IMG/VR virus record: IMGVR_UViG_3300029893_000001 | Location: 328,329-392,328 of that record | DNA: 64,000 nt | Reading direction: 5' to 3' (one strand) | Shown: in pieces, positions 31,877 to 63,865 of the stretch | Numbering within the stretch: the first letter of the stretch is position 1 | Layout: each line of letters starts with the position of its first letter | Program-made: the position numbers and the translations under genes | The notes under the pieces: model-generated | Told to the model about the DNA's origin: nothing | Database searches by the model: none | The model's input: the letters and a program-made list of their open reading frames with translations, nothing else

Positions 31877-31981
31877 TATTCGGTCCTCCCTTGTGCCGAC
31901 TAGTATCGGGTGGGTTCGCTCCTCTTAAATGGAGAAGCCCCCGGGCATCCGCCCGGGGGCTATTCCCTTGTTGCCCGGAAA

Positions 31982-32452
31982 TCAGCCGGGCAACAAATCG
32001 TTCAGCTCGTCGAGGAAATCGTCGACCTCCCCGTCCGAAGCCTCCGCGGGATCCGGGGTCGGCTCGGGAGCCGGAGCGGGGGCCGGCGCCGCCTTCGGAG
32101 TCGCCTTCGGTGCGGCCGGAGGCGCCACCGGAGCCGCTCCGCCGAGGCTCGACAGATCCAGATCGTCGATCCCCAGGGACAGCGCCGGAGCGCTGGCCGG
32201 CGGAGGGGTGGGCGCAGCCTTCGGAGCCTCGGGAGCCTTCGCGGCGCCCTTGCCCTTGCCCTTCGGACAGCCCCGGGCGTTGTGCCCCTGCTCGCCGCAG
32301 GTGCCGCAGGTGTAGGTCGGGGCCGGAGCCGCCATCACCGCCGCCGTGGCCAGCGTCGAGATGGGAACGACCGCGAAGCCCATCGCGCTCAGCGCCCGCA
32401 CCACCTTGCCGAACTGCTCGTCGGTCATCTTGTCGGTCATCTTCTTGCTCAT
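31982..32452 (-). CDS. CCHC zinc-knuckle protein with a Pro/Ala linker and acidic C-terminal tail
   Basis: CGTCGEQGHNARGC is C-x2-C-x4-H-x4-C; own promoter (32497-32512) and hairpin (31925-31961). Confidence 0.8.
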   Translation of the reverse strand: MSKKMTDKMTDEQFGKVVRALSAMGFAVVPISTLATAAVMAAPAPTYTCGTCGEQGHNARGCPKGKGKGAAKAPEAPKAAPTPPPASAPALSLGIDDLDLSSLGGAAPVAPPAAPKATPKAAPAPAPAPEPTPDPAEASDGEVDDFLDELNDLLPG

Positions 32453-32722
32453 GATCATGATTCCTTTCCGGCGAGGCGTCCCTCGCCTCATTTCCTAGTA
32501 TCGAATGGGTTCGTTTGGCCGACTAGCGCCGCTGACGCTCCGCGTGACGCCGCGCCAACTCGGCGCGGGCCTCCTCGATCGCTAGAATCTCGTCCACGTC
32601 CAAACCGTCGTACATGGGGCAAAAACCTCCGTTCGCCGTCTAATATCGGCCGGGTTCGCCCAATTGACATTTCGAGAGTAGCTTAAACGGGCTTTGGCCC
32701 GGGTTTCCCCGGGCCGCCCGCC

Positions 32723-33139
32723 TCACGCCGCCTTCGTACGGGCGGCCAGCTTGGCGGCGACCGCCTTGCTGTACGCCGCCGCCTTCTCGTAGACCGCCGC
32801 CGCCAGGTGCAGATCGAGCCGGCCGATGCTCGACCCGAGGCACACGTGGCCCTCGGAGGGCACCCCGAGCACCAGCTTGTTCCCCTGGCCGCAGATCCAC
32901 CGCTGGAGACGCTGCCGGTTGCCGCTCGACGCCTTGGCCACGAAGACGTCGTGGACCGCGATGCGCGCCGGGCCCGGCGTCCCGTCCTCGCCGTGCATCG
33001 AGCGGAGCACGATGCCGAAGGACTTCACGCCCTCCCCGGCGGAGCCGACCTGCGCGCCGGTCGCGGCGTCCAGGTGGAAGACCAGGGCGGGGGCCAGCGG
33101 GAGATCGCGGGTGACGTCGTACGTGTTCTTCTTCGCCAT
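32723..33139 (-). CDS. Hypothetical early protein
   Basis: Own promoter (33187-33202), RBS and downstream hairpin-TTTAA; strong GC3 bias. Confidence 0.75.
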   Translation of the reverse strand: MAKKNTYDVTRDLPLAPALVFHLDAATGAQVGSAGEGVKSFGIVLRSMHGEDGTPGPARIAVHDVFVAKASSGNRQRLQRWICGQGNKLVLGVPSEGHVCLGSSIGRLDLHLAAAVYEKAAAYSKAVAAKLAARTKAA

Positions 33140-33210
33140 GATTCACCATTCTTTCTGGGGCGCCGTGCCCCGTCGTTGTACCGACTAGTATTGTCAGGGT
33201 TCGGAAAACT

Positions 33211-33344
33211 TGGCGGAGTCACATCGATGCATGGGTGGAGCCCGTGTCTCTGTGCAAGTGACTCGCTCCCGACGAGTATGTCCCTACGTGCAGCTTGCCG
33301 GTAACGTAGAGGGAGACCGCCGGGCGGCTATCATTCCTCCGCCA
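33211..33344 (-). ncRNA. Candidate small structured RNA
   Basis: Starts just after promoter 33351-33366; 8-bp terminal stem TGGCGGAG/CTCCGCCA plus internal hairpins; only a 16-codon ORF follows the RBS-like sequence. Confidence 0.4.
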
Positions 33345-34241
33345 TTCACTACTATCAGCCGGGTTCAAATCCCTCTTAAACGCGAGAAGGCCCGGGGCTT
33401 TTGCCCCGGGCCCCATCACCCGACCTTCCGAATCGGGGCGACGATGACTCGACTACGCAGCTCGCGCCGCTCTCGGAGCTTGCGGATCTGCAAATCGAGA
33501 AGCGCAATCGTGGCATCGAGCATTTCCCTTTCCTCGGGATCTTGCTCCCTCACACGCTTGCGCAGCGCCTCCGCTTTCTCACAGAGGAGTGCACGAATGA
33601 CATGATCGTTCATTATTCACCTCCCACCAACTACTATCGAGCGGGTTCAATTGCTATTCGGGAGTAGGGTCACGCGGAAATAGGAAAATGCCGACCAATT
33701 AATTTTGACCCATAAGTGGTAAAGTATGTAACCGCTCGTTCACACATTCTCACGCTTAAGTACGTATACGCTCGCAGCCATTGCGAGCTTGCTTGTACCC
33801 ACTGCGAAATAGCCTAATAAGGCATGTACGCTCGCAGCCATTGCGAGCGGGGCGGGGCGTTAAAAGGCTACGGGCCCCAGAGGGGCCCTATCTCCTCGCA
33901 GCCGTTGCGAGAAATGGTCCTAGTAGTCCATCCGTCCGCTCGGAATGGGACCCGAGCCGAGCAGGTAGGCCAGCGCCTCGACCCACGCCGCTCGTCCAGC
34001 GGCCAAGTGAGACCTCAGGACGAAAATGCTTCCCAACGCTCCGACTTGCAGATCGAGAGCAAGTCGAGCCTGGTGCTCGTGGTAGCGTGCCGAGCCGACC
34101 GCTAGAGCAGCACGAGCACACTGATCACCGAAATCTTTCTCCGTGGCCATCGTTGCCTCCTCGCCGATTATTATCAGCTGGGTTCAATTCGTGCGCGGTT
34201 AAATGCGTAACGGCTGCGAGGAATCTCGCAGCCGCTGCAAA

Positions 34242-34401: not shown

Positions 34402-34428
34402 GAACCGTTCTCGCAGCCGTTGCGAGAA

Positions 34429-34767: not shown

Positions 34768-34892
34768 GATTATTCCTCCTGGGCCGGAGCCCGTTGCCCC
34801 GACTAGTATCGGCCGGGTTCGGCCGACTAGGGAATTAAACGCGCAACGGCTGCGAGATTTCTCGCAGCCGTTGCTTGTGTAGAGTCAGTGGG

Positions 34893-35075: not shown

Positions 35076-35123
35076 TTTGCATTTCCCTCGCTAACTATTA
35101 TCCGCAGGGTTGCTTGTGTAGAG

Positions 35124-35402: not shown

Positions 35403-36404
35403 TCGGCTTTCCTCCTCAGCGACTATTATCGTCGGGGTTCACGTCCGACACGAAAAGCGCGTTAAATGAAACAACGGCTGCGAGAAATCTCGCAGCCGTT
35501 GCGTGCCTTGGGAACTTTGGAACTACAGGACCACCCATCCCCAGAAGACGGCCCAGGCGATGAAGCGGATCGGCCAGCGGGTCCAGGAGTCATTCTGCCA
35601 GAGGCAGAGCAAAATCCAAGTGACCCCGAACGCCGGCCAGAGCGTATTGAACCACGGGATCACCTGGACGATTCCGCACCAGATCCAGTACGTCAGCAGG
35701 AAGCACGTGGAAATGTTGCAGAAGAACTCCACCCAATCCGAGATTTCCATCTCGTTGTGCGGGGTGTAGATCGTCCGGCCCGTCTCGTGGTCCCTGTAGA
35801 CCTTGTACGTGGCGCGGAGCGGGCGGATGCTCGGCTGGAGCCGGCGGATATTCTTCGGGTTGGGCATGGGTCGTCTCCTCGCTGACTATTATCAACAGGG
35901 TTCTCGCAGCCGTTGCGAGAAATTAAAGTAAGATGGCCCCGGGTTTCCCCGAGGCCCTCTTTTCATCCGAGCGGCTGACTGAGAGCCACCGCACGGCGTC
36001 GAGCGTGGATCGGATTGCTCTTCCAGAAGCGAGCCCAGAAATCGCGCTCCGCTTGCTTCGCCTCGTGCTCATTCCTGTACTGCAATTGAACGAGCAGATC
36101 GGCGTATTCCCCATCCCACTTGGGGTCGTACTCCAGCGACTCACGAACGAGCTGGAATCCCTCCGTTTCGACGACCGCCTCGGCCCGGAGCGCCCGGAGT
36201 CGGTACGGGACGAATCGGAGGAGCGCCTCCCGATAGTCAGCGTCGTTTGTGATGAATCGGCTCGCCTGTCGGAGCCAGTCGGCAGCCGACTGTTGCTCTT
36301 TCATGACTCGCCGATACAGCACCTCGGAGAACGGGATGATTTCTGCCATTCAACCTCCCTTCGCCGATTATTATCAGCAGGGTTCTGTGCGGCCGTGAAT
36401 GTCC

Positions 36405-36592
36405 TTAAAGCACGAAAAGGCCCTTGCTAGGGCCCTTTCGCGGGTCATTTCGGCAAAAGCTGACCAGGCTCGGAATACCAAGGCACGTGGTCGTGTACCT
36501 TGGTTAGCCTTGCCCCTTTTCGAGTCCATTATTGGTGGCTCGCCTTACGGGTGGGAGGGTGCAGCCCGGATGGAAACGGAACGAGAACACCA
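36405..36592 (-). ncRNA. Candidate structured RNA with its own promoter and terminal hairpin
   Basis: Promoter 36596-36611; no RBS; nested stems 36477-36486/36495-36504, 36466-36470/36506-36510 and 36443-36447/36461-36465. Confidence 0.45.
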
Positions 36593-37163
36593 TTTAGTAT
36601 CGCCAGGGTTCTCGCAGCGGCTGCGAATCCCTAAATCCCGATCCAGTAGTTGTCCAGGTCGCTCAGCTTCACGCTGGTGATCTCGGGATTGTGGTCCGGC
36701 AGACGTTGCTTGGCGAGTCGACGGACGTGAACATCGAACTCCTTTTTGTCCCTCGTTCGCGTCAGGACCGTGAATCTGTCCACCGCCGACTTCCCGTCGA
36801 CTTCGTAGCACAGTTCGATGAGATACTTCATTTTCCGCCTCCTCGCCGAATATTATTGGCAGGGTTCTCGCAGTGACGGCGAGAATTTAAATTGAGAAAG
36901 GCCCCTCGCGGGGCCCGTCTCAGTCGTCGCGGAGGCACGGGGTCGGTCCCCCGCAGAATCCGCAGCGCCCCGGATTGTGGTACGCTGAGAGCACGTGATT
37001 GTTGGCCACGTGCTCCGGCTCGAAATAGTCTTCGGTTTCCCGAACTTCCATTCCTTCCGGGGCTTGCTCGTCGTCGAGGAGACGCACGGCTCGTGCCGTG
37101 GTCTTGCCGGGGTTGGCAATGTAGTAGCGGATGGTCATGCCGAATATTATCGGCAGGGTTGAA

Positions 37164-37236
37164 TCGGACCGGTGGGATTCGAACCCACAACGTCCCGGTT
37201 ATGAGCCGGGGGCTCTAACCATTGAGCTACGGTCCG
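37164..37236 (-). tRNA. tRNA with CAT anticodon (Ile2-lysidine or Met), no encoded CCA
   Basis: CGGACCG-TAGCTCAATGGTTAGAGC-CCCCGG-CTCATAA-CCGGG-ACGTT-GTGGG-TTCGAAT-CCCAC-CGGTCCG-A; full cloverleaf. Confidence 0.95.
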
Positions 37237-38702
37237 ATGGTTTTCACTAGGTTACGTTTCGCGTTACTTTGTGCGAACGATTCAGGCCCAGATCCCAGGC
37301 GCCGAATCCGGTTGCTCCGGGATCGGGATGTATTGGTTTCCCACGAATCCCGCCGCCGCGTCCAAGGCGACCACACGGGGGAATGTCACCGCAGGGTGCG
37401 GCTCATCCTCCCAATAGGCTTCCCACGCAGCCAGAGCGAGATACTGCAAGAGCAGTTTTTCCATTATTCACCTCCTCGCCGTATCCATACGGGCTTGCAC
37501 CACTTTTCTCAATGACACGAGGCCTTGGGTCGCTGTCTTCCCACAAACGTATGGGTGCAACCCATACGTTTTCGCCTTTGGTGTACACGAGAATCAACCT
37601 TGGACAAATTGATCGGGTGTTCCGCAGTTCCACACCCTCAAGGGTGTGCCCCAACGGGTCGGCTCCTCGGTCCAGTCGAAGTGGATCCGGCGGGAGTTCC
37701 CCTTCCGAATCCAGAACTTCCCCCTCGCATCCTGAGGCCGACTCCACACGTCGGCCGAGACGTTCATCGAGTCCAGGAGATCGTTGACGATTCCGTGGAA
37801 ATCCACCCAATCCTGCCACTCCAGAAAGCGAGCCTTCGGCTTCTTGCGGGGCGGGAAAGTGACGACGCACTCTCCGGGGTGATTCCCGCAGTATTCCTTC
37901 GCGGTCACGAGGCGGACGCGCTTCAGAAGGATCGTCTGGCCATCGACGCACGATTCCACGTTGAAGCGACCGTCGGCCCGCACCTTCTTTTGAAGGGCTA
38001 CGTGGATTCGCTCGACGTCGCTGCCGTCGAGCACCTTGATTGAGTACGGCATGATTATTCCTCCGTGGGTTGGTCCAGCGAGCTTTAGTATCGGGAGGGT
38101 TCTCGCCGTGGCTGCGAGAATTAAACTGGAAACGGGCCCCGGGAAAACCCCGGAGCCCGTTTTCTAGAACTCGCCCTCGTCGTCGTCCACCGCGTCGAGT
38201 GCGTCTGGACGTCCGAGGCCGCCGTCGGGCCCATGAGGGTGGTACCTCTTTTCCTTGTGGATGTCCAGAAAGAAGAGCGCCTCTTGCAGCGAACGCACCC
38301 TCTTTGGATTCTTCGTCCGCACCATTTTTGGGTTCGTCAGGGAATCCTTCGAGACCCACTCCTCGACGAGAAAGAAAACCTCCGGGCACCCATCGAGAGG
38401 AGCCGAGGGCCCGGTAATATTCTCGATGACGGTCGAGATTCGGCCTCGCTCGTCCGAGAAAATCACCGTGGTCGGCTCGAAATCGGTGAGCTTTTCGATG
38501 ATTTCACTGTAGGTGAACTTTCGCATTTGTTCCCTTCTACCGACGGTATCGGTACTCCTCGTCCACCTCTTGCTGCGTGGGCTCCCTTCCGAGCCTCTTG
38601 CGCAGATCGTCGCGGGCCGCGTTCCACTTGCGCTCGTCCTCCGCCCTTTCGAGAGCGCAGGCCGAGCATCCCATCATCATGCACATGGTCGCCTCCCTCT
38701 GA

Positions 38703-38917: not shown

Positions 38918-39023
38918 CTCGCCGTCGTGGTCTACTATCAGGAGGGTTCAACTCCTCTAATTAAACAGAGAAAGGGGCCTGTGGCCCTTCTCCCTGTTTT
39001 GGAATCTCGCAGTGGCGGCGAGT

Positions 39024-41505
39024 CTAGTAGGCCCGGCTCACCACCGGAAGCCCACGCAGTTCCTCGACTATTCCCTTGAAGGCGACCTCGACCTCGCCGG
39101 TGTCGGGCAGCTCGACCGTGCGATCGATTCCGTAGAGATCCTCCAGGAACTCCCGGAATCCAGGCGTGTCGCCGCGGAACGGCTTGTTGAGAAGCCACTC
39201 CGCGAACTCTTCTCGGCGATTCCAATCCAGATCCTTGGCGACCTGCGTACCGATTGCCACCCCGAGGATACAATATCCTCGGACATCCCAACGATCGATG
39301 AACGACCTCGCGCTGCTGTCGCTCGAAAAGACTCGACACGAGTAGTGCACGTGCCAGTAGCCCCACTTCGCCGCCGGCTCGCTCTCCCTCACGTCGTCCA
39401 TGGAGGCGTAGGAACCCATTTCCGGGCCCCACCCATCCGACGACGGCATCGCCCTGACGAACGTATGGGCACTGTCGTAGCGATTTCGGATGAAGCTGCC
39501 GTCCGGCATCTTGAAGGCGTTGATCTGGTGGCAGTGCGGGTGCTTGAGATCCTCCTCCAGCGACTGCTTTGCGCTCTCGACGCTGCGCTCGCAAAAGAAC
39601 CTCCACGAGAGCACCGCGCTGATGAGCCGCTGCCAGACCTTGTGAGAAATCTTGTTGTTCATTGTTCTGCCCTCCTCGCTCTAACTATTATCGTCGTCGA
39701 CTACGATCCGATGCTCCCCATTCGCGGCGCATGCTGAATCACGTAGGAGACGCCGGTCAAAACCCAGCCAGCGGGAGTGTGGCCGTAGATGTTCACGCAG
39801 AACGTGAACACCAACACGGCGACGATGACGTACCACCTCTTGAGGGTTTCCACGATTGATTGACCTCCTCTCGCCGAACTATTATCGACGGGGTTCGCCG
39901 TCATATCGAGAACGACGAAATGCCCTCCGGGACTTACCGGAGGGCATTTCGTCAGGATTCCACGATCTTGCCGGCGTCGAGATCCACGAAACCGATGTGG
40001 ACGTACTTCCAGCCCGTGCTTCCAATGAGCGTGGGCGAATCCGGGAGACGCTCCGGAGCCTCGGCGAACGTGCAGCCCTCTCCGACGAGCAGGAACGCCA
40101 AGTGGCCGAATCCAGAGGAATCCACCGCCGCGTTTTGGTAGGCTGCCCAGCGAGTTCGCTCGCGCTGTCGAGCGCGCATTTGGCTCAGGACTTCCTCGTC
40201 GATTTGGAGATCATTGGTCGTCATCATGTCCCTCAGTACAGGTTCACGTAGACGCTATCGCCCACGATTTCCATCGCGTCCCGGACCTTTTGGGCCGCGT
40301 TCATTTCCTCGACTTCGCAGCGATCCCACGTCGCTCTCTGGTCGAGCACGTCGCGGAGAGCAGCCGGCGTGACGAGCACCACTTCGGTGTCGCCCCAGGT
40401 GAACGCGTTGGTGATGAGTTCCGAGACGATCTCGTATTCCTCTTCGGAGAGGAACTCCGAGAGCGTGATGAACTGGCACTCGAAAAGCGTCGGTCGCTTC
40501 ATGGCCTCCTTTCGGTCGCAGTCTTCGCAGTTGCCTGGACCGCGAAACTCGAAGACAGTCGGACTGATTTCCTGGCCACACGTCTTGCAATGATATTCGG
40601 CCATGTTTTTCTCCTCGCCTATTATTATCGACGGGGTTCGTGGTAACGACAAACGCAGAATAGGCCCCGAGTTTCCCCGGAGCCTATCTCTCTCACTTGT
40701 TCCTGAAGTACGTCTCGTACCCGATGTCCTTGGTGGACATCAGATTGTGCTTGAGATTCATGGACTCGCCGCTGAGCATGCGGCGCATTTCCTTCTCGCT
40801 GACGAAATCCACCCACTTCTCGTCGTGTTCGGGCCGAATCATGTGGTAGTTCTCGGGGTGAGAGCCCGTCGAATCGTAGTCGGTCCACTTCATGATCTGT
40901 TGCGTGGTCCATCCGACCGCCGGCATTCCGGTCATGTCGTAGCACCCGCGATTGACCAATTCGGTGGCCACCACTTCGTGCCCTTCGATGACCAGCTTGA
41001 CGATCGGCCAGTCCTCGGGATCGAGAACGTTGTCGCTGAGTCGGGCGTAGAGAATCGGCTTTCGCATCTTACCTCCTCGTTAAACGCGAAAAGGCCCCTT
41101 TCGGGGCCTCTGCTATTCCTCGGGAGCAAGTAGCAGCATGGTTTCGGCGGCGTGAGTCAGCGCACCCCACTGGAGTGCTTCCTCCTCGCACACCGCCTTG
41201 TACGCGCGTTGAAGTACACGCAGAAGCACACGCTGCTCGAATTGAATCCGAGCCTCGCCGATCATTTCGTCGAGGGGCGGGCCCTCGTCGTTGTAGTAGG
41301 CGATGCACGCCGGCTTCATCTGCGGGAACGTCTCGCAGTACAGCCAGTCGAGCACGCTCTTGTATTCGTCTTCCCTCGGAGGGGCGATCTTTCGCAGCGC
41401 CTTGGCGTGTTTGCTCGTGCGGAGCCACGCCTCGACCTCCGGGAAGAGGCTCGACGTGAGAGGCCCTCGAACGACGCAAACGCACACCATCTGGAGAGCA
41501 CTCAT
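39024..41505 (-). other. Early-region hypothetical ORFs
   Basis: 39024-39662, 39952-40227, 40233-40604, 40693-41067 and 41113-41505, mostly with clear GGAGG/GAGG RBS. Confidence 0.7.
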
Positions 41506-41531: not shown

Positions 41532-41604
41532 TGACCCCAACGGGATTTGAACCCGTGTTCTCGCCGTGAAAGGGCGGCGTCCTAGGCCACTAGACGATGG
41601 GGCC
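41532..41604 (-). tRNA. tRNA-Glu (TTC), no encoded CCA
   Basis: GGCCCCA-TC-GTCTAGTGGCCTAGGAC-G-CCGCC-CTTTCAC-GGCGA-GAAC-ACGGG-TTCAAAT-CCCGT-TGGGGTC-A; own promoter 41620-41635. Confidence 0.95.
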
Positions 41605-42830: not shown

Positions 42831-42877
42831 GGCTGTGGGATTCATTAAACGCGAAGAGGGGCCCGAAGGCCCCTCTT

Positions 42878-43432
42878 CTATGCGTCCACCATCGCCCGAC
42901 GGCTCCAGTAGAGGATTGCCTTGGCGAAATCCTCCGCCGAATAGGTGGCCGGCGTTCCTCCGGGGAGACCCAGGAAGTTGCGGGCCATCGCCATCGGAGT
43001 CTGGGGCTCCGGCTCCTCGGTGGGGCGGGCGTTGATCGAGACGATCTCCCACTCGCATTCCGTCGAGGCGTCGTTGCCGAGAACGTCGTGCCTGTAGAGC
43101 ACGATCTCGACGACCTTCGCGGGAGCCTTCTCGCCCTTCGCACGCACCTCGATGTAGGGCTCCTCGCCCTCTCGCCGCGCCGAGAACGTCGCCCGGAGCG
43201 TCGTCTTCGGAGTGACCTCGATGACGCCACACTTGAAGTAGTGCGCCTGACTCTCGGTCATCGGGATGAGCAGAACGCCGTCGCGGTAGCCCGGCTTCGC
43301 CTCGGAGAACTGCTGCTCGACGAAAGCGATGAGCACATCCCACTTCGCATCGTGGGTGGCGATGAAGTGTGAGAAGGGGCTCTCCGGCGTCTGGCGACGC
43401 ACGAAGTCATTGATTCCGATGAGGTTACCCAT
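42878..43432 (-). CDS. DUF3228-like protein
   Basis: FVRRQ..., Y/FxARRxxExP, IVLYRHDVL, WEIVSI, EPQTPMAMARNFLG..GG..Y...ILYWS pattern; promoter 43466-43481. Confidence 0.7.
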   Translation of the reverse strand: MGNLIGINDFVRRQTPESPFSHFIATHDAKWDVLIAFVEQQFSEAKPGYRDGVLLIPMTESQAHYFKCGVIEVTPKTTLRATFSARREGEEPYIEVRAKGEKAPAKVVEIVLYRHDVLGNDASTECEWEIVSINARPTEEPEPQTPMAMARNFLGLPGGTPATYSAEDFAKAILYWSRRAMVDA

Positions 43433-44280
43433 GATTGATTCGGCCTCCCTTTGCCTCGCCAAACTACTATCGATTGGGTTCAGTCCCTCTCGATCGCGGA
43501 GAAGTCTCCCAGGTTCCACGTGGTGTGAGTGGGCTGCATGATGCCGAGAACCTGAGTTCCGTAGTTCTTCTCGTAATCCCAGGTGTTGAAGTCGCCCCGC
43601 GACTGAGCGTAGGCAGCGATGACAGCCTCTCGTGGAGAGCACGAAAACGTCTGCTCGTGGCAGGTGGCGAGGTTGAGGACAGTGGTGAACATGATTGATT
43701 TCCTCCTCTCATTAAACGCGAGAAGGGGCCCGAAGGCCCCGTTCTTAGTGACTCCAGGAGCGACGCACACCCTTCGAGAGGCGGCGAATCATTCGCTCCT
43801 CCTGAGCGATGACCTTCCTGGCGACCGGATTGAAATCGCGCAGGTCATCGCGCGTTGGGTAGATCCGGTCGATGTCCAGTCCGAATCCCCTACCGCTGTG
43901 ATGGCTGAAGAGACTTACATGACCAGGAAAAGCCATCGTCTCGATGTAGTGTCCAATCACGACTGTCGAGATCGTGACGTGCCGGGTCTTGCACCACGTG
44001 CGGTACTCCGGACGAAAGAGATCCCAGGACTTCGGGATGCGCCGTCCGTACCACCGGATGATCGGCTGCTTGAAGACGACCTTCGTGACCCTCTGGACCT
44101 GACCGTCCTTGTGGGTGATGATCTCGGTGGAGCGCCGGAGAGCGCCGGAGAATGTTGCTCATGATTGATTGCCTCCTCTGATTGATTGCCTCCTCGCTCA
44201 ACTATTATCGGCGGGGTTCAGCGTTCTCTTAAACGCGAGAAGGGGCCCGAAGGCCCCTCGTACGCAGCTCACTTAGTGAG

Positions 44281-47900: not shown

Positions 47901-50900
47901 GTTCAGCCCTTTATTAGTATTAGTCTTCGGGCCCGGACACTAAATGGGTTCTAAGGGCCTCCGGAGTTTCAGCCTCAGGCGACCAGCGGTCTTCTATCCA
48001 GTATCCTTCCTGGTGTCGACGACCGTTTATCCAAAGGTTGTAGTGGTCGTTTTGGATGTCACAGTGGCAGGTGTGAGCCGTCGAACGCAATATGCGTAGC
48101 GGATACGGCCCTTCCATCTCGAAGCGATCGGATATCACATCATACAGCCAGCGAGCCCTGACCGCCGTCTTCGGTGGCTCTCCTTTAAGGATCTCCCTTG
48201 GATGTTCAAACCGTCCGCTGAGCCATGCAACAGCTATTGCGTTGAATATTTGTTGCTTGCTGCTCAGATCAATTTCGTTGCTGGACAAGTCTGTGCTCCC
48301 TTAGAAGTCTATGTCGAAGAACTCGGTAGGCTCACTCTCCGAGAGGACAAGATCGTCGTCCCGATAGGTTTCTGAAACGTGGTCTCCCTGAGGAAGGGGC
48401 GTATTGGTGTCGTCATAAACGCACCAATCTCCCTCGCCGAGCCCTCGAATGTAGAGAATCCCAGCCCCAATTAGGACCACTTGCTGCGAAGCAAGTTCGC
48501 CTACTTCAAACTGGATGTGATCGATCTCCGCATCATCCGTTTTGTGTCGCACGCTATAGCGCATATTTGCTTGGCCCCTTAAACGAGAAAGGGCCCTTAC
48601 GGGCCCTCTCTCAGTCGTCTGTCTCGATCTCGAACTTGACTCCTCCGGATTCCATCACGAGAGTCTTCGCCCGGGCCTTCGCCCGGCCTTCCTGCCACTC
48701 CTTCTCGTAGGGGAACTCCGAGGAATCCACCCACTCTCCGGCCGCGAGGCGCTGGCAGATTGCTTCGCACTCGTTCCAGTGACAGGCGTCGTCGGCGAGC
48801 ACGGCGACTCGTGTCAGGTGTCCGACCTGCGTAGCGAACAGCACGGAAATCGGATGCAGATGCACCCAATCCGATCCCCGCTGCGGCTTCGAGACGTCCA
48901 TGATGTCTTCGCGGTGGGCCTCCTTCCACAGGAGATCCATGACCTTCGAGTAGCTGCGGAGAACCGCCCTCAGATTGCAGGCACTCTGGGCGTCGAGCGC
49001 CAACTGTGCTGCCCGCTGGATCTCCTCCTGATGGAGGATTTCCTCTTCGGTGGTGCGGCCCTTCGCGATGTCGATTTCCTTTTGGCTGACCATGATTTTC
49101 CCTGTTGGTTGATTAGTAGTCGTAGTCGAGTTCGTAGTCGTACCCGTAGTCGTCGTACCCATCCAATTCGTCTTGACGATCCAACTCCCACTCGGAATCC
49201 CAATCCGTGTAGTCGTAGCTGTCCGTCAACGACTCCTGGTAAAGGTACCAATTCTTCTCCTCGTCGTGGTCGACGAAGAAATCCTCGTAGGGAAGAATCG
49301 GCCCCAGAGAATATTCGTGCAGGCCCTCGGCAAGGGCAGCGGACTCAGAAAGCTCTGGACGTCGCATTGATTCCTCACGATTGGATTGTCATTGCCTGCT
49401 GTCTAATATCCCCAGGGTTCGACACGCCGAAGGGCCCCGGATGGGCCGCCTCGGTTAAAAGGCCTTGGCGTCAGGAGTCGCGGACCACGACTTCGTACTC
49501 CAGCTGCGGGGAATACGGGACGTCTTCCCATTCGGGAGGAATGTCTCCGAGCTTCTTGGCCAGTTCGCTTCGCGTATCAGGCTTGCGTCGCTGTAGCCGG
49601 ACGAGTGCTCGACCCTCGCCAATCCGCTTCATGGAAATACCTTCCATCCACAGGACCGCGCGAATCTGAGCAGGAAGATCTTCGTGAGTTGCCTGGAACT
49701 TATAGAAGATCGTAGTCCAGTGCTTCTCCATGATTCGCTTCATCTCTTCTTGGACGCTCAGAGATGGAGCCGTGTCGAGCAGACGAACCATCAGCCGATA
49801 TTCGCTCGACTTGCAAATCGAAACTTCCTCGATAACCGGCTGAATCCGGGTCATCGAGATGTAGTTCTGGAGATAGACGTCCCTGTAGTTTTGGGCGTCC
49901 CTTTCGGTCTGAAACAGGAGAGCCCCGCCTCCCTCCCCGTACAGGACCCGATTCTCCAACGTCTTCGATAGCTCCGTCAGCGGATGGCACAGAGCGAACA
50001 TCTTATAGCTTTCCATCACTGCCCCTCGGTCAGTAGAAGAACATTAGGTACACGTAGACGACCCCCGCCGCTACTATTGCAACGGGGGCGAAATAGTTGT
50101 CGAAGATGTACCAGAATCTCTCCATCAGACCTTCTGAAGAGTGTTCCTGAAGTCGTTGAACTTCGTGTCGGGGATTCGTCGCTTCACAATCTCCTTTCCG
50201 CTGGAGTCGAGAACGTGCAGTTCGACGACCCCATCGGAATTCCTTGCGAAGATTACGCTTTCGCCGGCCACGCCGAAGGTCATTTCGGCTGCGACAGTCT
50301 TCTTGTGTTCGTGGATCGAGACTTCGTCGTCCATGGTTCCTCCTCATTAAACGCGATTAGGGGAGCTTTGGCTCCCCTAATCTCTATTCATCGATGCTGA
50401 GGGCCTCTTCCATTTCGTCGTCCGACGAATAGCCGAGGAGCGTCTGCATGCCATCGACAGCCCACCGGAGATATTCGATCTCACCGTAGGAGTCGCCCTT
50501 CTCCAGGTCGGAGAAATCTTCCCCATAGATGTCACCGAGGTCAGCGGCGAGCCTATCGATGGCCTCTTGAGCCTCCTCGGAGAGGCCGGTGCCATCACTC
50601 ACCACACTGTGAAGGTGGAGGAGCGCGCTCCGAATCTCGACGACGGTGTTTTTCTCGTGGGCCATTATTCGCTCCTTCTGCGGCGATGACGCCGCCATCT
50701 ATACTATCGTCGGGGTTCGTGCTTGATTAAAGCGAGAATGGCGCCCTTGAGGGCGCCCCTCTCACGATCCGATTCCGAACCCGTAGTCCTCGCCGCCCCA
50801 CGTATTGTAGGGCCGAGTCATGAATCCGTTCGGATGCCTACGCTGCGGGAACAGCACCCTGACGACGTACCCGCGAGGATCTCCATCGAAGCGGACACGA

Positions 50901-54961: not shown

Positions 54962-54998
54962 AAAAAAAGGGCAGGCCATTTCTGGCCTGCCCTTTTTT
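54962..54998. terminator. Bidirectional intrinsic terminator between convergent genes
   Basis: A-tract-GGGCAGGCCA-TTTC-TGGCCTGCCC-T-tract. Confidence 0.9.
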
Positions 54999-55900
54999 CT
55001 TACTCTCTCGGAGTCGTGCCAGGATCGACGGCACCCCGCCCGATCATGTAGTACGACGATCGCTCTTCGGGTTCTTTGTTGAGGACCCGATCGATCGCCT
55101 CATCGATTGCAGTTCGGTTCTCTCGAATGAATTGACGAAGCTTTCGCTCGCCACCCATTTCGGACCGCCACCACCTGTAGAGACCCTCGTCGTTCCGAAC
55201 CCAGAGTTCTCGCTCTTCGTCGTTTCGCGAGCGCTTCCCCACGTTCAACACTCCTTCCATGGCGCCACGGTGAATCCGACGTCAGCCTCATCAGGGAAGC
55301 GGTCGCACATTTCCCTGTACGCCTCGCCGGCCGAATTCGCTCGGATGTAGTACCCCTGACGCGCTGAGGTATCCATCGCACCTGGAACGTTCTTACCGAT
55401 GTACGGAGCCTCACGAGTACATCGGTACATGAACGAACCGTGCTGTTCCTTCTTTTCAGGTGCCATGATTACTTCCGGGTCGGGCGGTATGGAATCGTGG
55501 TGTCCCGCGTCTCGTAGAGGCGATCCCTCTGAATCATCCTAGCGATGTACTTCTCCTCACGGTCGAATGACGGAGGAGGAAAGGCTGGAGGGAACATCTG
55601 GCCCTTGTATTCATTGTACGGCTCGGCCATCAGCACATCCCCCTGACGTGCTGGTACTTCTCGTTGACCAGCTTCCAGTACCGTCTCATGGACATGAGCT
55701 TCTTTCCAGCCCCACGATGAATGATCGTCCGATTTCCCTTCTTGTTGAGAGAGCTTCGAGCAATCACCGAAGGGCTATCCGGGTAGGTGGCAGCCCGCAC
55801 CTCCGCCTCTTCCCTGGATGGGTGGAAGGACACCAAAGGCTTTCGGCCTTCGATGTTCTTCACCGACACTCGGTAGATGTATCGTGCCATCTTGTTCTCC

Positions 55901-57006: not shown

Positions 57007-58013
57007 GATTAGTCCTGCCTCGTCTACAGTGCATCCACCTTGACACGTGCTGCGTAGAGAGCCACCGAAGCCTCCTCCAGCTTTTCAGCAGCAGGCTCAG
57101 TGACTTCCTTCTTCCAATTGGTTTCCCTAAGTCTACGAAGAAGATTGTTGATCTCGTCGTTGATAGCGACTAGCTCTTGGCGGTCGTGGTCCATATTAGT
57201 TCTTCTCCTCCCCGAGTGAAACGAACTCGTTTACGTATGCCTTGCGGTACACTTCCTTGACTTCCGAATCCATGATCGAAGCGTAACTCTCCGACTCACC
57301 AAGGCGCTCTTCGGCCTCAGCCTCGTCGAGAACGGCCTCCGGGTCACCATCGAGGATTGCTTCGACTTCCGTTCTTGCATCGGCCCGAGCATTCTTCTCG
57401 ACGTGTCTAAGAAACTGCTTGAATAGAGGAGTCATAGTTCCTCGTAGTGCCACTCGCGATCAGCGTGAACGTCTTGCTTGTTGAGCTTGCGGTTCCAGTA
57501 CTCCAGGAGAGGTGCAATCTTCTGGCTCGGCATTAGGAAGACAGAGCTTACTCCGCTTTGTCCGGAAACCTTTTCCGTCCATCGGTACTTGACTTCCTTG
57601 ATGAAAACGTCAGATCGGTCTCGCGAGTAATGAATGCCGGCTTCGTAGTATTGAGTGGTCATTTCGGTCTCCTACATGTCTCCCCAAAACCAATCCTTCC
57701 CGCAGTCTGGGCAACTAGTTGCCATCGGGCCGGCTGGAGTAGAGTGCTTGCATTTATTTCGAAGAGACACGTACTCCTTTTGTAGTACGCGAAGCTCCTC
57801 TTCGAGCTTATGACGTTTGTCGTCTAGCTCTTTTCTCTTTGATCTGATTTCTTCAGGAGACATGGTAGAGTCCAGGTTAAATGCGAAAGGGGGCGGGCCA
57901 CCGGCCCGCCCCCTTTCAGAGGAGTCTAGCTGCTGCGAGCAGCACACCGGAGGCAATTGCGAGGAGGGCGACGACTTGCGCCATTCGCAGCAGTAGAACC
58001 TCGTCGTTCATGA

Positions 58014-59753: not shown

Positions 59754-60671
59754 CGCTTTTCGCCTTCCTCGATTTCTCTGATCGATCGGATGTGGACGTG
59801 CTCGTACGTCTTTCCCCATTCCTCACGGGCCACTGACTCTGCCGACTCTCGGTCGGGAGCATCCACTTCGAGATCCGGTAGCATGTAGAAGATTCCGATA
59901 GCCCCGACTTGGCGCCCTTCGGCACGGACCTTGAACCTCATGGCTTTTCGTCTCCGCTTATTCAGCTCTGAATTACGTATCATCTGGCGCGGCACTAGGC
60001 CAACTATCAAGAAAGTCGACAAGAGACTTAAGGATCTTGTAGTCTTCCATTCCTAGTCTCTTTTCACAGAAAGTTACTAGTTGCTGGAAGGTCTTGATGC
60101 CACTAGCCTCCTTAAGCAAAGCACGTTCTTCTTGTAGTGTGATGTCCTCGTTGGTAAACATCTCACCAACTATTGGCTTGATACGCTGATTTACGTACGC
60201 CAAAACTAGCTTGTAGTTTGAACTACCCATCTTGTTCCAATTCGCTACTATCGTCTGGGTTCGTTAGCGCCGAGGCATCATCCACGGCCACGCGAAAAGG
60301 CACGTCGCGTAATCAAGAAGCGTAGGGCGCGGACCCTCAGGCGGGCTAGTGATGAATGCCGCTAGGCACCACCACAATCCAGCAGCCAGATACAGAAGAC
60401 CAAGACCAGCGAGAATCCAAAGGGGAATGAACATCAGTAACCTCCACTCCTTAAACGCAGAAAGAGCCGGGGTGGCCGACTCTTTCTACAGGACTATGAA
60501 AGTTTCTGACCGACGTGGGGACGCTCGCCCCTCACTTGCTCGACGAATGTCGGTAGGCCGGTCTTTCGCTGTGCCTTTCGTGCACATTCCTGAGCCTCGG
60601 AGAGCAGAGCCTCCCCGAAGACTCCGAGGACAATGCGACCTTCGCTGGTCACGACGTGCCAGGTTGGCTTG

Positions 60672-61028: not shown

Positions 61029-61357
61029 CGTCAGTCCTCCGAGATTCCGAGAGCGACTCGCTCGACTCGCGTGAGCTTTGCGATCGCCTGTTCTCGGAGC
61101 TTCTTGACGTTTACGTGAGACATCTTCATCGTGATGTCTTCGACGAGGAAGTATGACTTGGAATCATTGTCATCTTCGTCGAGCACCGCGATGGCCTTCT
61201 TCTCTCCAGCGTAGGAGCGATACCCGCCGCCCTCTTTCTGGTAGGCCATCGCTTCCGCCTTTTGGAGGAAGTACTTCGGAGTGTGGCGTCGGTCTCCGTC
61301 GGTGTCGTCCACCTGATAGACCGTGACCAGATTTGCTGTGAGTGGCATCATGATTGA

Positions 61358-61936
61358 TTAGACCTCCTCTTCTTCGTGAGCATTCCAGTTGGCGACGAAG
61401 ACTGCCACCATGGATGGCGTCCAGGTTTCCCGGAAACCCTCGCCCTTCTCAGAATGGACCCAATTCAAGAACGCGTCTTGGGATTCCGATTGGGCCACAT
61501 CCGCCGGAACCTCGACCATCCCAGTATCCCAACCGTATTCGGTCAGGAAGTAGACCTCGATCTTCTTGAAGGACGGGATGGTACGGAACTTCAGGGCGTG
61601 AGCCTTGAGGTACACGGTGTGCTCGTCGCCCCAAAGGTCTCCCCGCTCGCCGTCGTACTCGACGTCGGAGTAGTCATCCTTCCAGCGAGCCCCGACCAGA
61701 GGGAAGCCTTCCATCTCGGAGAACACCTTGACCACTTCACGATCCGGGAACGTGTGGAATTCCCGGTGGTCGTGATGCATGACCGTCCCGATGCACTTCA
61801 CGATCTTCGGGAAGTACTCGGGATTCGTGAGGCTGCGATGAGCACCGACTCGGATGCGGTATCGCTTCCCCTGGAAATCGTACTCGGCTTCGAGATCGTA
61901 GCTGACCACGAACTTCGGATTCTCGTTATCGCTCAT
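61358..61936 (-). CDS. Hypothetical early protein
   Basis: GGAGG RBS; promoter 61971-61986. Confidence 0.7.
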   Translation of the reverse strand: MSDNENPKFVVSYDLEAEYDFQGKRYRIRVGAHRSLTNPEYFPKIVKCIGTVMHHDHREFHTFPDREVVKVFSEMEGFPLVGARWKDDYSDVEYDGERGDLWGDEHTVYLKAHALKFRTIPSFKKIEVYFLTEYGWDTGMVEVPADVAQSESQDAFLNWVHSEKGEGFRETWTPSMVAVFVANWNAHEEEEV

Positions 61937-61988
61937 GATTATTCCTCCGCTGCTGCCCTGGTTTCGCTTTACTATCAGCAGGGTTCGG

Positions 61989-62453
61989 TTAGCAGTGGTC
62001 CCAATCGTATGCAACGAGTCGACCGTCTACAGTGCGACCCACTTGCCCACCATCGATTCCCCATGTCCAATCTGGTTTCTCAGACCAACCAACATGTTCG
62101 ACATATTCCATCCGGAGTACAGCGATGCCAAGTTCTTTTCCCAAACTGTCGTCGAAGTTACATCGGGCAAGGAACTCGGGCTGTTCATCCCAAGAGTTTG
62201 CCTCGTAGAAGTTGGCGTGGAAACCGGTCTCATTGAGAGGGATCTTGATTACTTCGGTAGGGCTGATGCGAAAGCAGATCCGATTTCGTCCCTCTCCAAT
62301 CTCGGGACCGAAGCGGTCTCGGGCCTTTTCTATTGCTTCTCGGCAAACGCTTCTGAGTTTGTTTTCATCCTCAACTTCGACGATGAAGGACGGCTGCCTA
62401 AGCAGATTGATATCTTTGGAAGCCTTCGTCTTAGGTACGTATTTCTTAGGCAT
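61989..62453 (-). CDS. Minimal protein-kinase-like fold protein
   Basis: IGEGRNRICF..VIKIP...N..EA...LRMEYV resembles a kinase N-lobe and hinge; the C-lobe is very short. Confidence 0.45.
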   Translation of the reverse strand: MPKKYVPKTKASKDINLLRQPSFIVEVEDENKLRSVCREAIEKARDRFGPEIGEGRNRICFRISPTEVIKIPLNETGFHANFYEANSWDEQPEFLARCNFDDSLGKELGIAVLRMEYVEHVGWSEKPDWTWGIDGGQVGRTVDGRLVAYDWDHC

Positions 62454-63865
62454 CGTGAACTGGACACTGCCTTGTGATAGGAAGGTCTGCGTCGTTGCAG
62501 TTGCAGTAATAGATTGAACCATCCTCTACGACGGCCTCATCCGGTCCAGGAATCGGGGGACATTCTGAAATCGGTTCGCTCCACCACCATCCCTTCCAGG
62601 AAGTCCCTTCAACAAGTACGTGGTCAAGCCCCCGTACAGGATGCTGCGGGCAAAATAGGGCGCCGCTGGGTAGGCTCGCCACTGTAAGCAACCCAACTAC
62701 ATCCCAATTATTAGCCCGAGTCCAGTATACCCCAGGCTGATTCGGCATCACGCGCTGCCACATAAGACCTCCTTAAACGAGCAAGGGCCCCGCAGGGCCC
62801 ATGCTCAGAACGTCGCCGAGCCCGTACACCAGGCTTCAGCAATCTCTTGGAAGGGATCACTGTCGGGGTCCAGGTTCCAGTCGACTTGCTTGGCCAACTG
62901 CGGATTGGCTTCGATGATCCTGTCGATGGTGCTGACGTCCGAGTAGTCGATCAACTCGGACTCTGCCGTGACGATCATCTCGTTCAGATCGTTACTCACT
63001 TCGTCCAGCAAACCATCGACTTCGATGTAATCGTATCCAGCGAAGTGTAGCTCGTAAGACGGAGTGAGCGAGCAGATGTGGACGTGCAGATTGCGATCGA
63101 ACACGTACACTGTCCAGATCGCAGTCGTCATCTCCTGGATGTCTTCTCTCCAGAATCCGCGACAGGGAACCTTGACCAGCCAGTAGTCCGGCGGGACCTT
63201 GCGCTCCTCGGCGACGTCTTCCATGATTAGTCCTCCCACGGATCCCGATGGCGTCGAGGCCCGTAGATGTGAGTGTAGATGATACTATTGCCCCAAGGAT
63301 CGTTGCATCACTCCTGGAAGGGGACTTCCTGCTGGAACCCCTTTCGCTCCAGCAGATCCGTCATGGCATCCGCCATCTTCTGGGCCATTTCGTAGCCCAG
63401 GAATGTCGTGCCCAGCGAATCCTTGAACGTCTTGTCGGATCCCTGCCAACGAGACACGAATGTGAGGGTCTCGTGCGCTCGTTCGCTTTCTCCCGTCGCT
63501 TCTCTCGACAGGTAGATTCGCGCACCGTAGCCAGCCGCAGCCGGTGTCGTGAAGAACAGCTTGTGCTTTCTCATTATTCATCCCTCTCGATGGAAGCGGG
63601 TGCGGAGGCTTCAGCACTCGATGAAGAATCCGCCGTGGACCGTCATGACATTCGCGAACTGCTCCTCGTAGATATCGAGGACCTTCTGCGAAGTCTCGCC
63701 GAGTTCCACCGGCCTGAGCATGGCTCGGTAGATCCGAGACAGCCTGAGCCCCTCCCGTCGGAGAAGCGTCTTGAAACTCTCCTCCGTCAGGATGTATTCC
63801 ATGTCGAGATACGTACGCATCCAGCCGTTGAGGATACGTTCACGGTCCTTGTCGAGGTTCAACAT
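62446..63865 (-). other. Hypothetical early ORFs
   Basis: 62446-62763, 62805-63224, 63308-63574 and 63611-63865 with RBS; promoter 63900-63915. Confidence 0.65.

What the first reader, a model, noticed from the sequence alone, without database searches (positions are those of the whole stretch)
31925..62800. Hairpin followed by a conserved CGTTTAA about 8-10 nt downstream rather than a U-tract
Seen: about 25-30 GC hairpins followed by TT(C)TCGCGTTTAA-like tails with only 2-3 T next to the stem. The plus-strand late-type gene instead uses a classical T-tract terminator (54962-54998). In several cases (41080, 43712, 50347, 60451, 62773) TTTAA is followed at once by the next RBS with no GAACCC promoter, so full termination would orphan those genes. 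Inference: a phage-RNAP-specific or leaky terminator, an RNA processing or stabilising site, or a second hairpin-type promoter class (N4 virion RNAP promoters are a precedent).
Basis: partly seen in the sequence, partly recalled or inferred. Interest (0 to 1): 0.6.

Follow-up and report, generated by a model that had tools for sequence, protein, structure and literature searches.

The report
Short-U-tract terminator hairpins in jumbo phage
The repeated 'hairpin then TTTAA' signals are most likely leaky transcription stop signs for the host RNA polymerase, paired with a phage promoter to make small gene cassettes in an uncultured 392-kb phage; this is an unusual variant of a familiar device, not a new kind of machinery.

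Summary
Twenty-three strong RNA hairpins, all on the minus strand of window 31929-62806, are each followed within 0-4 nt of the stem base by TTTAA; 12 read CGTTTAA. Ten more lie elsewhere in the 392-kb phage genome.

The elements work as sense-strand RNA: G.U wobbles, GNRA/UUCG loops, and stop codons abutting the stem.

The phage has a sigma factor, no T7-type RNAP domain and no beta-prime catalytic motif. The signal therefore most likely acts on host RNA polymerase.

Related uncultured phages keep hairpin+TTT(T)AA downstream of rIIB, with compensatory stem changes. The two most distant ones keep it although they lack the GAACCC promoter. Two relatives replace TTTAA there with TTTT(T)GTGG, so it is interchangeable with an ordinary U-run.

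Best reading: non-canonical, probably leaky, intrinsic terminators/attenuators. They are built like E. coli rrnB T1 and arranged with a compact promoter in PeSL-like cassettes. The phage-RNAP-specific and hairpin-promoter readings are not supported, and RNA processing is not excluded. No RNA data exist, so function is inferred.

The parts
62773..62806 (-). hairpin + CGTTTAA, followed by SD and ATG 9 nt later with no promoter
60451..60489 (-). hairpin + CGTTTAA, followed by SD and ATG (16 nt)
57877..57918 (-). 16-bp hairpin + gcaTTTAA; no promoter or start codon nearby
50727..50765 (-). hairpin + TTTAA, GAACCC promoter 8 nt downstream
50347..50384 (-). hairpin + CGTTTAA, followed by SD and ATG (12 nt)
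48579..48612 (-). hairpin (GUAA loop) + CGTTTAA, followed by a start codon (14 nt)
46568..46615 (-). hairpin (GAAA loop) + CGTTTAA, followed by SD and ATG (20 nt)
44229..44272 (-). hairpin (UUCG loop) + CGTTTAA, promoter 9 nt downstream
43712..43745 (-). hairpin (UUCG loop) + CGTTTAA, followed by SD and ATG (19 nt)
42845..42884 (-). hairpin (UUCG loop) + CGTTTAA; the stop codon lies inside the stem base
41080..41113 (-). hairpin (GAAA loop) + CGTTTAA, followed by SD and ATG (12 nt)
38961..38996 (-). hairpin + TTTAA, promoter 11 nt downstream
38121..38164 (-). hairpin + TTTAA, promoter 18 nt downstream
36887..36922 (-). hairpin (GCGA loop) + TTTAA, promoter 19 nt downstream
36405..36442 (-). 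hairpin + TTTAA, promoter 19 nt downstream
35923..35961 (-). hairpin (GAAA loop) + TTTAA, promoter 19 nt downstream
35462..35502 (-). 14-bp hairpin (GCAACGGCTGCGAG arm) + TTTAA, promoter 21 nt downstream
34835..34874 (-). 14-bp hairpin (same arm) + CGTTTAA, promoter 14 nt downstream
34199..34239 (-). hairpin (related arm) + TTTAA, promoter 13 nt downstream
33860..33903 (-). hairpin + TTTTAA
33376..33419 (-). hairpin + CGTTTAA, promoter 9 nt downstream
32683..32719 (-). hairpin (GAAA loop, AAA bulge) + CGTTTAA, promoter 25 nt downstream
31925..31966 (-). hairpin + TTTAA, promoter 7 nt downstream
47315..47353 (-). variant: 13-bp hairpin + CG-TTTGG
39905..39953 (-). variant: 17-bp hairpin with no TTTAA, followed by a promoter
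54962..54999 (.). classical bidirectional terminator (17-bp stem, A-run and T-run flanks); the contrast class

Best explanation
These are non-canonical intrinsic (factor-independent) terminators or attenuators read by the host's multisubunit RNA polymerase. Each has three parts: a GC-rich core hairpin; a lower stem in which a purine-rich ascending arm (GAGAA/GAAAA, often closed by CG) pairs with a pyrimidine-rich descending arm (UUCUC/UUUUC + CG); and, directly at the stem base, a short U-tract followed by two adenines (UUUAA, or UUUUAA in relatives). Inferred mechanism: when the polymerase is transcribing UUUAA the GC core has already folded. The lower stem then zips up and pulls the descending arm out of the RNA:DNA hybrid, leaving only weak rU:dA and rA:dT pairs, so some complexes release. 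With only 3-4 U's, and with the stop codon (and so the terminating ribosome) overlapping the stem base, release is probably partial. That would make the elements attenuators that grade expression along multi-gene units and insulate neighbouring cassettes, while the hairpin left at the RNA 3' end protects the transcript. Together with the compact promoter YGAACCC-N3-YGATA-N-TA they form promoter / 1-4 small ORFans / terminator cassettes, analogous to PeSLs of T4-like phages. Shown here: the structure, the strand, the position, the conservation and the lack of a phage RNAP. Inferred: actual termination, its leakiness, the zipper mechanism and the role of AA.
For: RNA-level, sense-strand structure: stems hold 29 G.U pairs against 2 A.C mismatches. 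The sense fold is more stable than the antisense fold in 22 sites, less stable in 5 and equal in 6. GNRA (6) and UUCG (3) make up 9 of 24 four-nt loops. Terminator-like asymmetry: A(5')-U(3') pairs outnumber U-A pairs 100 to 20. Position: 22 of 23 window sites follow an open frame whose stop ends at a median of -1 nt from the stem base. TTTAA starts 0-2 nt after the stem in 29 of 33 sites. Host RNAP: no PF00940, no PF00562 and no DFDGD-type motif in six frames, with one sigma-70-family gene present. Evolution: syntenic relatives (rIIA 43-69% identical) carry hairpin+TTT(T)AA on the sense strand. At the junction after rIIB, 6 of 8 genomes have TTT(T)AA and 2 have TTTT(T)GTGG after a homologous hairpin. 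The five homologous hairpins give 16 consensus pairs, 8 of them with compensatory changes. L051 and L052 keep the tail without the GAACCC promoter. Precedent: the K-12 rrnB T1 sequence has the same layout, with an AAAACGAAAGG arm, a CCTTTCG arm and then TTTTAT. GC-rich Streptomyces use long hairpins with weak U-tracts (PMC12207403), and species-specific stems with short U-tracts serve as non-canonical terminators (PMC13714241). Leakiness: 7 of 23 sites are followed by SD and a start codon with no promoter, and relatives do the same. d'Aubenton-Carafa-type scores are mostly below zero for window sites. A generic scanner that needs at least 5 T's finds only about 4 of 23 sites. The phage uses a long T-run terminator where convergent genes meet (54962-54999). 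The sites co-distribute with the promoter motif (Spearman 0.60, p = 0.005).
Against: No transcript 3' ends are available: no RNA run holds this phage. By E. coli criteria, 4 or fewer U's is typical of non-intrinsic ends (PMC13714241). The G/C residues next to the U's, and the near-invariant AA (23 of 26 terminator-like hairpins in the array, and most sites in relatives), are not explained by the textbook model. They could mean that a protein or a nuclease reads the sequence. The host is unknown, so its polymerase's requirements are unknown. The terminator score formula was recalled from memory and used with modern energy parameters. Absence of a phage RNAP rests on Pfam models and one motif search, so a very divergent enzyme could be missed; the 2813-aa ORF has no match to anything.
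Confidence: 0.6

Rival explanations
1. RNA processing and stabilising site. The polymerase reads through, an endoribonuclease (RNase E/Y-like, host or phage) cuts in the single-stranded UUUAA at the hairpin foot, and the hairpin then protects the upstream mRNA from 3' exonucleases. The downstream mRNA starts just before its SD.
For: UUUAA is the only A/U-rich single-stranded stretch between a stable hairpin and the next SD. GUUUA partly matches the RNase E consensus RAUUW (from memory). The conserved AA is easier to explain by sequence recognition than by the textbook terminator model. Seven sites, plus several in relatives, lie inside polycistronic units. U-tracts of 4 or fewer are typical of processed ends in E. 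coli (PMC13714241).
Against: At the orthologous rIIB junction TTTAA is replaced by TTTT(T)GTGG, which behaves like a U-tract rather than a specific cleavage motif. Thirteen of 23 sites are followed by their own promoter, where cutting would serve little purpose. The A/U arm asymmetry and the rrnB T1-like layout are hallmarks of terminators. No nuclease candidate was identified.
Confidence: 0.17
2. Factor-dependent signal. A phage or host protein recognises the hairpin foot with UUUAA and either enforces termination or, later in infection, suppresses it, acting as a temporal switch over the cassette array.
For: The AA is conserved beyond what a U-tract needs, across phages with 43-69% rIIA identity. 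Many orphaned downstream genes would benefit from regulated read-through. UUUAA is shared with the boxA core (from memory).
Against: Only five bases are shared with boxA, and positions after TTTAA are not conserved. No candidate factor was found. The tail is interchangeable with TTTTGTGG.
Confidence: 0.08
3. Mainly a DNA-level repeat. The conserved tails mark cassette boundaries used for recombinational shuffling (PeSL- or integron-like), and conservation reflects copying rather than RNA function.
For: Sub-families of near-identical hairpins exist: three GCAACGGCTGCGAG, three GGGGCC-ttcg-GGCCCC and two GGCCCGGGGC. Window proteins have no relatives in IMG/VR, and most of those scanned match no Pfam or PHROG family. 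Metagenome contigs break at the repeats. PeSLs are a precedent (PMC2839356).
Against: Thirty of 33 stem cores are distinct while TTTAA is kept. Orthologous sites in diverged phages keep the structure through compensatory changes. The strand-specific RNA features (G.U pairs, tetraloops) are not expected for a purely DNA signal. No inverse core lies 5' of the hairpin and no integrase was seen. This reading is compatible with the terminator function and does not replace it.
Confidence: 0.05
4. Hairpin-type promoter for a virion or phage RNA polymerase (N4 precedent), with transcripts starting in or after TTTAA.
For: Geometry allows a start just upstream of the SD at the seven promoter-less sites. 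One 2813-aa ORF has no detectable family.
Against: No RNAP domain or catalytic motif was found. Stems have 10-19 pairs and mostly 4-nt loops, against N4's 5-7 bp stems and 3-nt loops (from memory). The fold favours the non-template-sense RNA. Stop codons lie inside the stems, and 13 sites are followed at once by a different promoter.
Confidence: 0.02

Closest known systems
E. coli rrnB T1-type intrinsic terminator
   Same: An A-rich ascending arm pairs with a U-rich descending arm, closed by CG, with a GNRA loop and a short U-run followed by A at the stem base. The K-12 sequence reads ...AAAACGAAAGG...CCTTTCG-TTTTAT; G000 reads ...CGAAAAGGGCC...GGCCCTTTTCG-TTTAAT.
   Different: rrnB T1 has 4 U's plus further T-rich sequence downstream and is a strong terminator. 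The window copies replace several arm U's with C, have only 3 U's and are followed by G-rich SD or promoter sequence, so they are probably much weaker.
PeSL (promoter-early stem-loop) cassettes of T4-like phages (PMC2839356, PMC4122927)
   Same: Composite promoter plus stem-loop terminator/attenuator units flank small ORFans in plastic genome regions. The nt-1 stem consensus is A3-4 G3-loop-C3 T3-4. The phage carries rIIA and rIIB and relies on host RNAP.
   Different: PeSL promoters are sigma-70-like (-35/-10); here the promoter is a compact YGAACCC-N3-YGATA-N-TA motif with no -35. In PeSLs the stem-loop often lies within the promoter; here it precedes the promoter by 7-25 nt or stands alone. 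Recombination and mini-circles were not tested.
Weak-U-tract, long-hairpin terminators of GC-rich bacteria (Streptomyces; PMC12207403) and species-specific non-canonical terminators (Neisseria DUS; PMC13714241)
   Same: Long, very stable hairpins with a short or poor U-tract, and a lineage-specific sequence signature.
   Different: Here the signature is in the tail (UUUAA) rather than in the stem, and it belongs to a phage clade whose host is unknown.
boxA / nut antiterminator sites
   Same: A hairpin next to a sequence containing UUUAA.
   Different: Only the pentamer is shared. There is no conserved CAA after it and no GCUC before it in most copies. Twenty-three copies placed after stop codons do not fit an antiterminator loading site.

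Membership tests
Canonical intrinsic (Rho-independent) terminator | GC-rich RNA hairpin encoded on the sense strand | tested here: met
   Median 14 pairs, dG -25.9 kcal/mol, z -5.6; sense fold favoured 22:5; compensatory changes at an orthologous site
Canonical intrinsic (Rho-independent) terminator | U-rich tract of about 8 nt (at least 5 U) immediately 3' of the stem | tested here: not met
   Only UUU(U) followed by AA. A generic scanner needing 5 T's in 8 nt finds about 4 of 23 sites. Scores are mostly below zero.
Canonical intrinsic (Rho-independent) terminator | Located just downstream of a stop codon, in the direction of transcription | tested here: met
   22 of 23 sites; median distance from stop codon to stem -1 nt
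Canonical intrinsic (Rho-independent) terminator | Produces RNA 3' ends in the U-tract with RNAP alone | not testable with these tools
   No RNA runs hold the phage
PeSL-type regulatory cassette | Composite promoter + stem-loop between genes | tested here: met
   13 of 23 sites have the GAACCC-type promoter 7-25 nt downstream
PeSL-type regulatory cassette | Sigma-70-like early promoter (-35 and -10) | tested here: not met
   The promoter logo shows no -35, only tGAACCCtGcCGATAnTA. Sigma-70-type matches are not clearly above shuffles.
PeSL-type regulatory cassette | Flanks ORFans in a hyperplastic region | tested here: met
   Window proteins mostly lack Pfam/PHROG hits and have no IMG/VR relatives
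PeSL-type regulatory cassette | Mediates recombination or mini-circle formation | not testable with these tools
   Only indirect: metagenome contigs break at repeated hairpins
N4-type hairpin promoter | Phage-encoded (virion) RNA polymerase | tested here: not met
   No PF00940, no PF00562, no DFDGD motif; the 2813-aa ORF has no family hit
N4-type hairpin promoter | Short 5-7 bp stem with a 3-nt loop, functional on the template strand | tested here: not met
   10-19 pairs, mostly 4-nt loops, G.U pairs favour the sense RNA; the N4 features are recalled from memory
boxA (NusB/NusE site) | Consensus GCUCUUUAACAA | tested here: not met
   Only UUUAA is shared; flanking positions are not conserved; the consensus is recalled from memory
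RNase E-type processing site | A/U-rich single-stranded segment next to a stem-loop; cleavage yields 5'-P ends | tested here: inconclusive
   The sequence context is compatible; cleavage is not testable. Replacement by TTTTGTGG at an orthologous site argues against a specific motif.
Rfam families | Match to a curated covariance model | tested here: not met
   Only two tRNAs pass their family thresholds in window 30000-64000; two weaker matches fall below their gathering scores

The most novel reading that the evidence does not exclude
The UUUAA at the hairpin foot is a sequence-specific recognition element for a dedicated factor that sets or lifts termination at dozens of cassette boundaries. 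The factor could be a phage-encoded or host endoribonuclease, or a termination/antitermination protein. That would make this a new, clade-wide class of sequence-plus-structure transcript-end signal in rIIA/rIIB-bearing jumbo phages, older than their phage-specific promoter.
Probability: 0.15. Interest if true: 0.7.

Novelty: new variant of a known kind. Interest (0 to 1): 0.4.

Why it matters
It provides a working regulatory grammar for an uncultured clade of tRNA-rich jumbo phages from subsurface and rock metagenomes: a compact promoter, a short-U 'UUUAA' terminator/attenuator, and cassette architecture. This helps define transcription units and early-gene cassettes from sequence alone.

Standard terminator finders, which require a long T-run, miss nearly all of these elements.

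The case offers a natural series of long-stem, 3-U terminators for testing how far lower-stem pairing can substitute for a U-tract.

The tail signal outlasting the promoter in evolution suggests it is matched to the host transcription or RNA-decay machinery, which may help with host assignment.

Tried and rejected
- Near-identity search of the phage collection with 8 kb of the window found no match.
- PolA tblastn found GenBank relatives at only 27-28% identity.
- An IMG/VR scan for the combined terminator-promoter pattern gave 15 single, chance-level hits.
- The IMG/VR relative G001 covers only the core 150-319 kb and has no hairpin+TTTAA, so it says nothing about the array.
- Three window proteins found no relatives in IMG/VR.
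- No run on record as RNA holds the phage. DNA contigs from four metagenome runs (two studies) are almost identical to the window (3 SNPs, none in a site), so they give no natural covariation.
- MAFFT alignment of the 33 paralogous sites only anchored on TTTAA and put the loops out of register. An 8-genome alignment of the orthologous site was also out of register. I used loop-centred counting and the 5-genome alignment instead.
- TAA of TTTAA as a back-up or real stop codon: no frame preference, 12/14/6.
- Avoidance of TTTAA outside the hairpins: not special, because all T-rich A/T pentamers are rare there. TTAA is only mildly depleted genome-wide, ratio 0.80.
- TTTAA as the sigma-28-type -35 of the downstream promoter: the spacing varies from 12 to 30 nt and fits in only two cassettes.
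- Integron attC: no inverse core 5' of the hairpin, the GTTRRRY core is not matched, and no integrase was seen.
- Hairpin strength in SD-followed versus promoter-followed sites: -23.8 against -26.3 kcal/mol, not significant (p = 0.27).
- Host identification was not achieved.

Full report
What the window is. The window is the last 64 kb of a single 392,328-bp IMG/VR viral contig that CheckV rates 100% complete. Its GC content is 0.53, rising to 0.56-0.63 in window 32-64 kb. The contig carries 44 tRNA genes and a tmRNA, all on the minus strand, a family-A DNA polymerase fused to UDG, and an rIIA/rIIB pair. No GenBank phage is close: the best PolA identity is 27-28%. DNA runs from subsurface and rock metagenomes hold it, and no run on record as RNA does.

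Checking the observation. CGTTTAA occurs 12 times in the window, always on the minus strand and only between 32683 and 62779. The expectation is 3.9, and none of 100 shuffles reached 12. Every copy follows a GC hairpin. Searching for TTTAA preceded by a stable fold gives 23 sites in window 31929-62777 and 10 more on the minus strand elsewhere in the genome. One of those, near 137.6 kb, is a 25-bp perfect palindrome that carries the motif on both strands. In window 31.9-63 kb, 23 of the 24 minus-strand TTTAA pentamers are at a hairpin foot, and the plus strand has 4. This is not avoidance of TTTAA elsewhere, because other T-rich A/T pentamers also occur only 2-8 times; TTTTT occurs 6 times, so ordinary U-runs are almost absent from the array.

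The hairpins are real. They have a median of 14 pairs and a median dG of -25.9 kcal/mol, and a median z of -5.6 against dinucleotide shuffles. Thirty of 33 stem cores differ from one another, and own-arm pairing is 0.98 against 0.47 between sites. Two more hairpins in the span have variant tails: CG-TTTGG at 47352, and none at 39953.

Anatomy. That 'spacer' (UUCUC, UUUUC, then CG or CGCG) pairs with a purine-rich stretch 5' of the core. When the stem is extended, TTTAA begins 0-2 nt after the last paired base in 29 of 33 sites.

The arms are strongly asymmetric. A(5')-U(3') pairs outnumber U-A pairs 100 to 20, and G-C pairs outnumber C-G pairs 193 to 125. This is the A-tract/U-tract layout of intrinsic terminators. 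The E. coli K-12 sequence downstream of rrfB shows that rrnB T1 has the same design: an ascending arm AAAACGAAAGG, a GAAA loop, a descending arm CCTTTCG, then TTTTAT. Genome sites outside the window, with tails such as CCCTTTTCG-TTTAAT, are very close to it. Window sites are a GC-richer version, with tails such as CCCCTTCTCGCG-TTTAA.

Which strand and which molecule. The stems contain 29 G.U wobbles and only 2 A.C mismatches. The sense fold is more stable than the antisense fold in 22 sites, less stable in 5 and equal in 6. Nine of 24 four-nucleotide loops are GNRA or UUCG. The functional form is therefore the minus-sense RNA, not a hairpin on the template DNA strand.

Context. Twenty-two of 23 window sites follow an open frame whose stop codon ends at a median of -1 nt from the first stem base, and 16 of these 22 lie within 8 nt. 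Thirteen sites are followed 7-25 nt later by the promoter-like motif. Seven are followed directly by SD and a start codon 9-20 nt away with no promoter: 62777, 60455, 50351, 48583, 46572, 43716 and 41084. Three are followed by longer non-coding stretches.

The promoter motif has the consensus tGAACCCtGcCGATAnTA. It has 64 copies in the genome, all on the minus strand, and no conserved -35. Its core resembles the sigma-28 -10 element GCCGATAA (PMC2859248). Terminator sites and promoter motifs co-distribute along the genome (Spearman 0.60, p = 0.005).

Which polymerase. The genome has no T7-type RNAP domain (PF00940), no beta-subunit domain (PF00562) and no DFDGD-type catalytic motif in any of the six frames. 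It has one divergent sigma-70-family gene with regions 2-4. The largest ORF (2813 aa) matches no Pfam, PHROG or NCBIfam model. The simplest reading is that the host core polymerase transcribes the phage, so the signal must act on a bacterial multisubunit RNAP.

Comparative evidence. The array region itself has no relatives in IMG/VR. The one IMG/VR relative covers only the core of the genome. Metagenome variants are nearly identical to the window. The rIIA-like protein, however, has homologues at 69-43% identity in the large metagenomic protein index, and seven syntenic loci were fetched.

Five of these loci (57-69% identical) carry the GAACCC...YGATA motif on the sense strand only, with 3-5 copies each. 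The two most distant (47% and 43%) have none. Six of the seven have strong hairpins followed by TTTAA or TTTTAA on the sense strand, several of them followed at once by SD and ATG; the seventh, L053, has only a weak fold before its single TTTTAA.

At the junction downstream of rIIB, six of eight genomes (G000, L045, L047, L050, L051, L052) have hairpin + TTT(T)AA. Two (L048, L053) have a homologous hairpin followed by TTTTGTGG or TTTTTGTGG. Aligning the five clearly homologous hairpins gives 16 consensus pairs, 8 of which keep pairing through changes on both sides.

Three conclusions follow. The structure is under selection. The TTTAA tail is older and more widespread than the phage-specific promoter. 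TTTAA is functionally interchangeable with an ordinary U-run.

Mechanism. Shown: the structure, strand, position and conservation of the elements, and the absence of a detectable phage RNAP.

Inferred: the elements are intrinsic terminators or attenuators. When the polymerase is adding the U's and A's of UUUAA, the GC core has already formed. The lower stem can then extend to the foot and strip the descending arm out of the hybrid, so that only weak rU:dA and rA:dT pairs remain and some complexes dissociate.

Termination is probably incomplete, for five reasons:
- The tract has only 3-4 U's.
- Classical scores are mostly below zero for window sites (the formula was recalled from memory).
- A generic scanner finds about 4 of 23 sites, yet it finds the classical terminator at 54962-54999.
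- Seven downstream genes have no promoter of their own.
- The stop codon overlaps the stem base, so a terminating ribosome would hinder folding.

The phage does use a long-T-run bidirectional terminator where convergent genes meet. This suggests the weak form is chosen on purpose. The near-invariant AA remains unexplained. It may widen the weak-hybrid window without creating a strong T-run, or it may be read by a factor.

Comparison with known systems. In architecture, the closest match is the PeSL cassette of T4-like phages. These are composite promoter plus stem-loop terminator/attenuator units flanking ORFans, with stems such as A3-4 G3-loop-C3 T3-4 (PMC2839356, PMC4122927). The promoter type differs, and recombination was not tested here. 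In terminator design, the closest matches are rrnB T1, the long-hairpin, weak-U terminators of GC-rich bacteria (PMC12207403), and the species-specific non-canonical terminators with short U-tracts (PMC13714241). No Rfam family matches.

Verdict. This is a new variant of a known kind, of moderate interest. The main uncertainty is the complete lack of RNA data and of a known host.

Noticed in passing
window 31401-31616 (minus strand): Seven back-to-back perfect hairpins (10-13 bp stems) with A/T-run cores such as GGATTTTCC/GGAAAATCC. They lie exactly at the GC step (0.54 to 0.63) and at the low-coordinate edge of the cassette array. Function unknown; they could be an origin, a packaging site or an insulator.
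   Followed up: no
window-wide, e.g. 44219, 41635, 34820; 64 copies in the genome: A compact promoter-like motif, tGAACCCtGcCGATAnTA, found on the minus strand only and with no -35. Its core resembles the sigma-28 -10 element GCCGATAA, and it often extends to the palindrome GCCGATAnTAnTCGGC. Five relatives (L045, L047, L048, L050, L053; rIIA 57-69% identical) share it on the sense strand only; relatives at 43-47% lack it. What reads it is unknown; the phage's own sigma factor is one candidate.
   Followed up: partly
window 34843-34874, 35472-35501, 34211-34234; 35901-35921, 34408-34428, 36865-36885, 38100-38120: The 14-mer GCAACGGCTGCGAG forms the ascending arm of three terminator hairpins. 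It also lies inside promoter-proximal hairpins (TTCTCGCA-acggc-TGCGAGAA running into the GAACCC motif). Metagenome contigs break at these repeats.
   Followed up: partly
window 54962-54999: A classical bidirectional terminator (17-bp stem flanked by A6 and T7) where a plus-strand ORF (54033-54944, no family hit) meets minus-strand genes. It is the only canonical long-U terminator in the array.
   Followed up: partly
genome 137611-137672 (outside the window; L036): A 25-bp perfect palindrome that carries TTAAACG...CGTTTAA. It is a bidirectional version of the element.
   Followed up: no
genome 105653-105726 and 130644-131041 (outside the window): ARAGORN calls a tRNA with anticodon CUA, which would read UAG, among the 44 tRNAs. 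It also calls a tmRNA with a long tag peptide. Many early genes end in TAG, so possible late-stage stop-codon suppression deserves a look.
   Followed up: no
window 37164-37236 and 41532-41604 (minus strand): Two tRNA genes (Met and Glu) sit inside the cassette array. tRNA-Glu begins about 31 nt downstream of the G of a GAACCC motif (41635), which limits where that promoter's transcription start can be.
   Followed up: no
L045 19251, L047 20287, L048 14586, L053 10441; window 32683-32719: A recurring subtype of the element has an internal AAA bulge and a GCC closing segment (hairpin-aaaGCC-TTTTAA). It is shared between the window phage and four relatives.
   Followed up: partly
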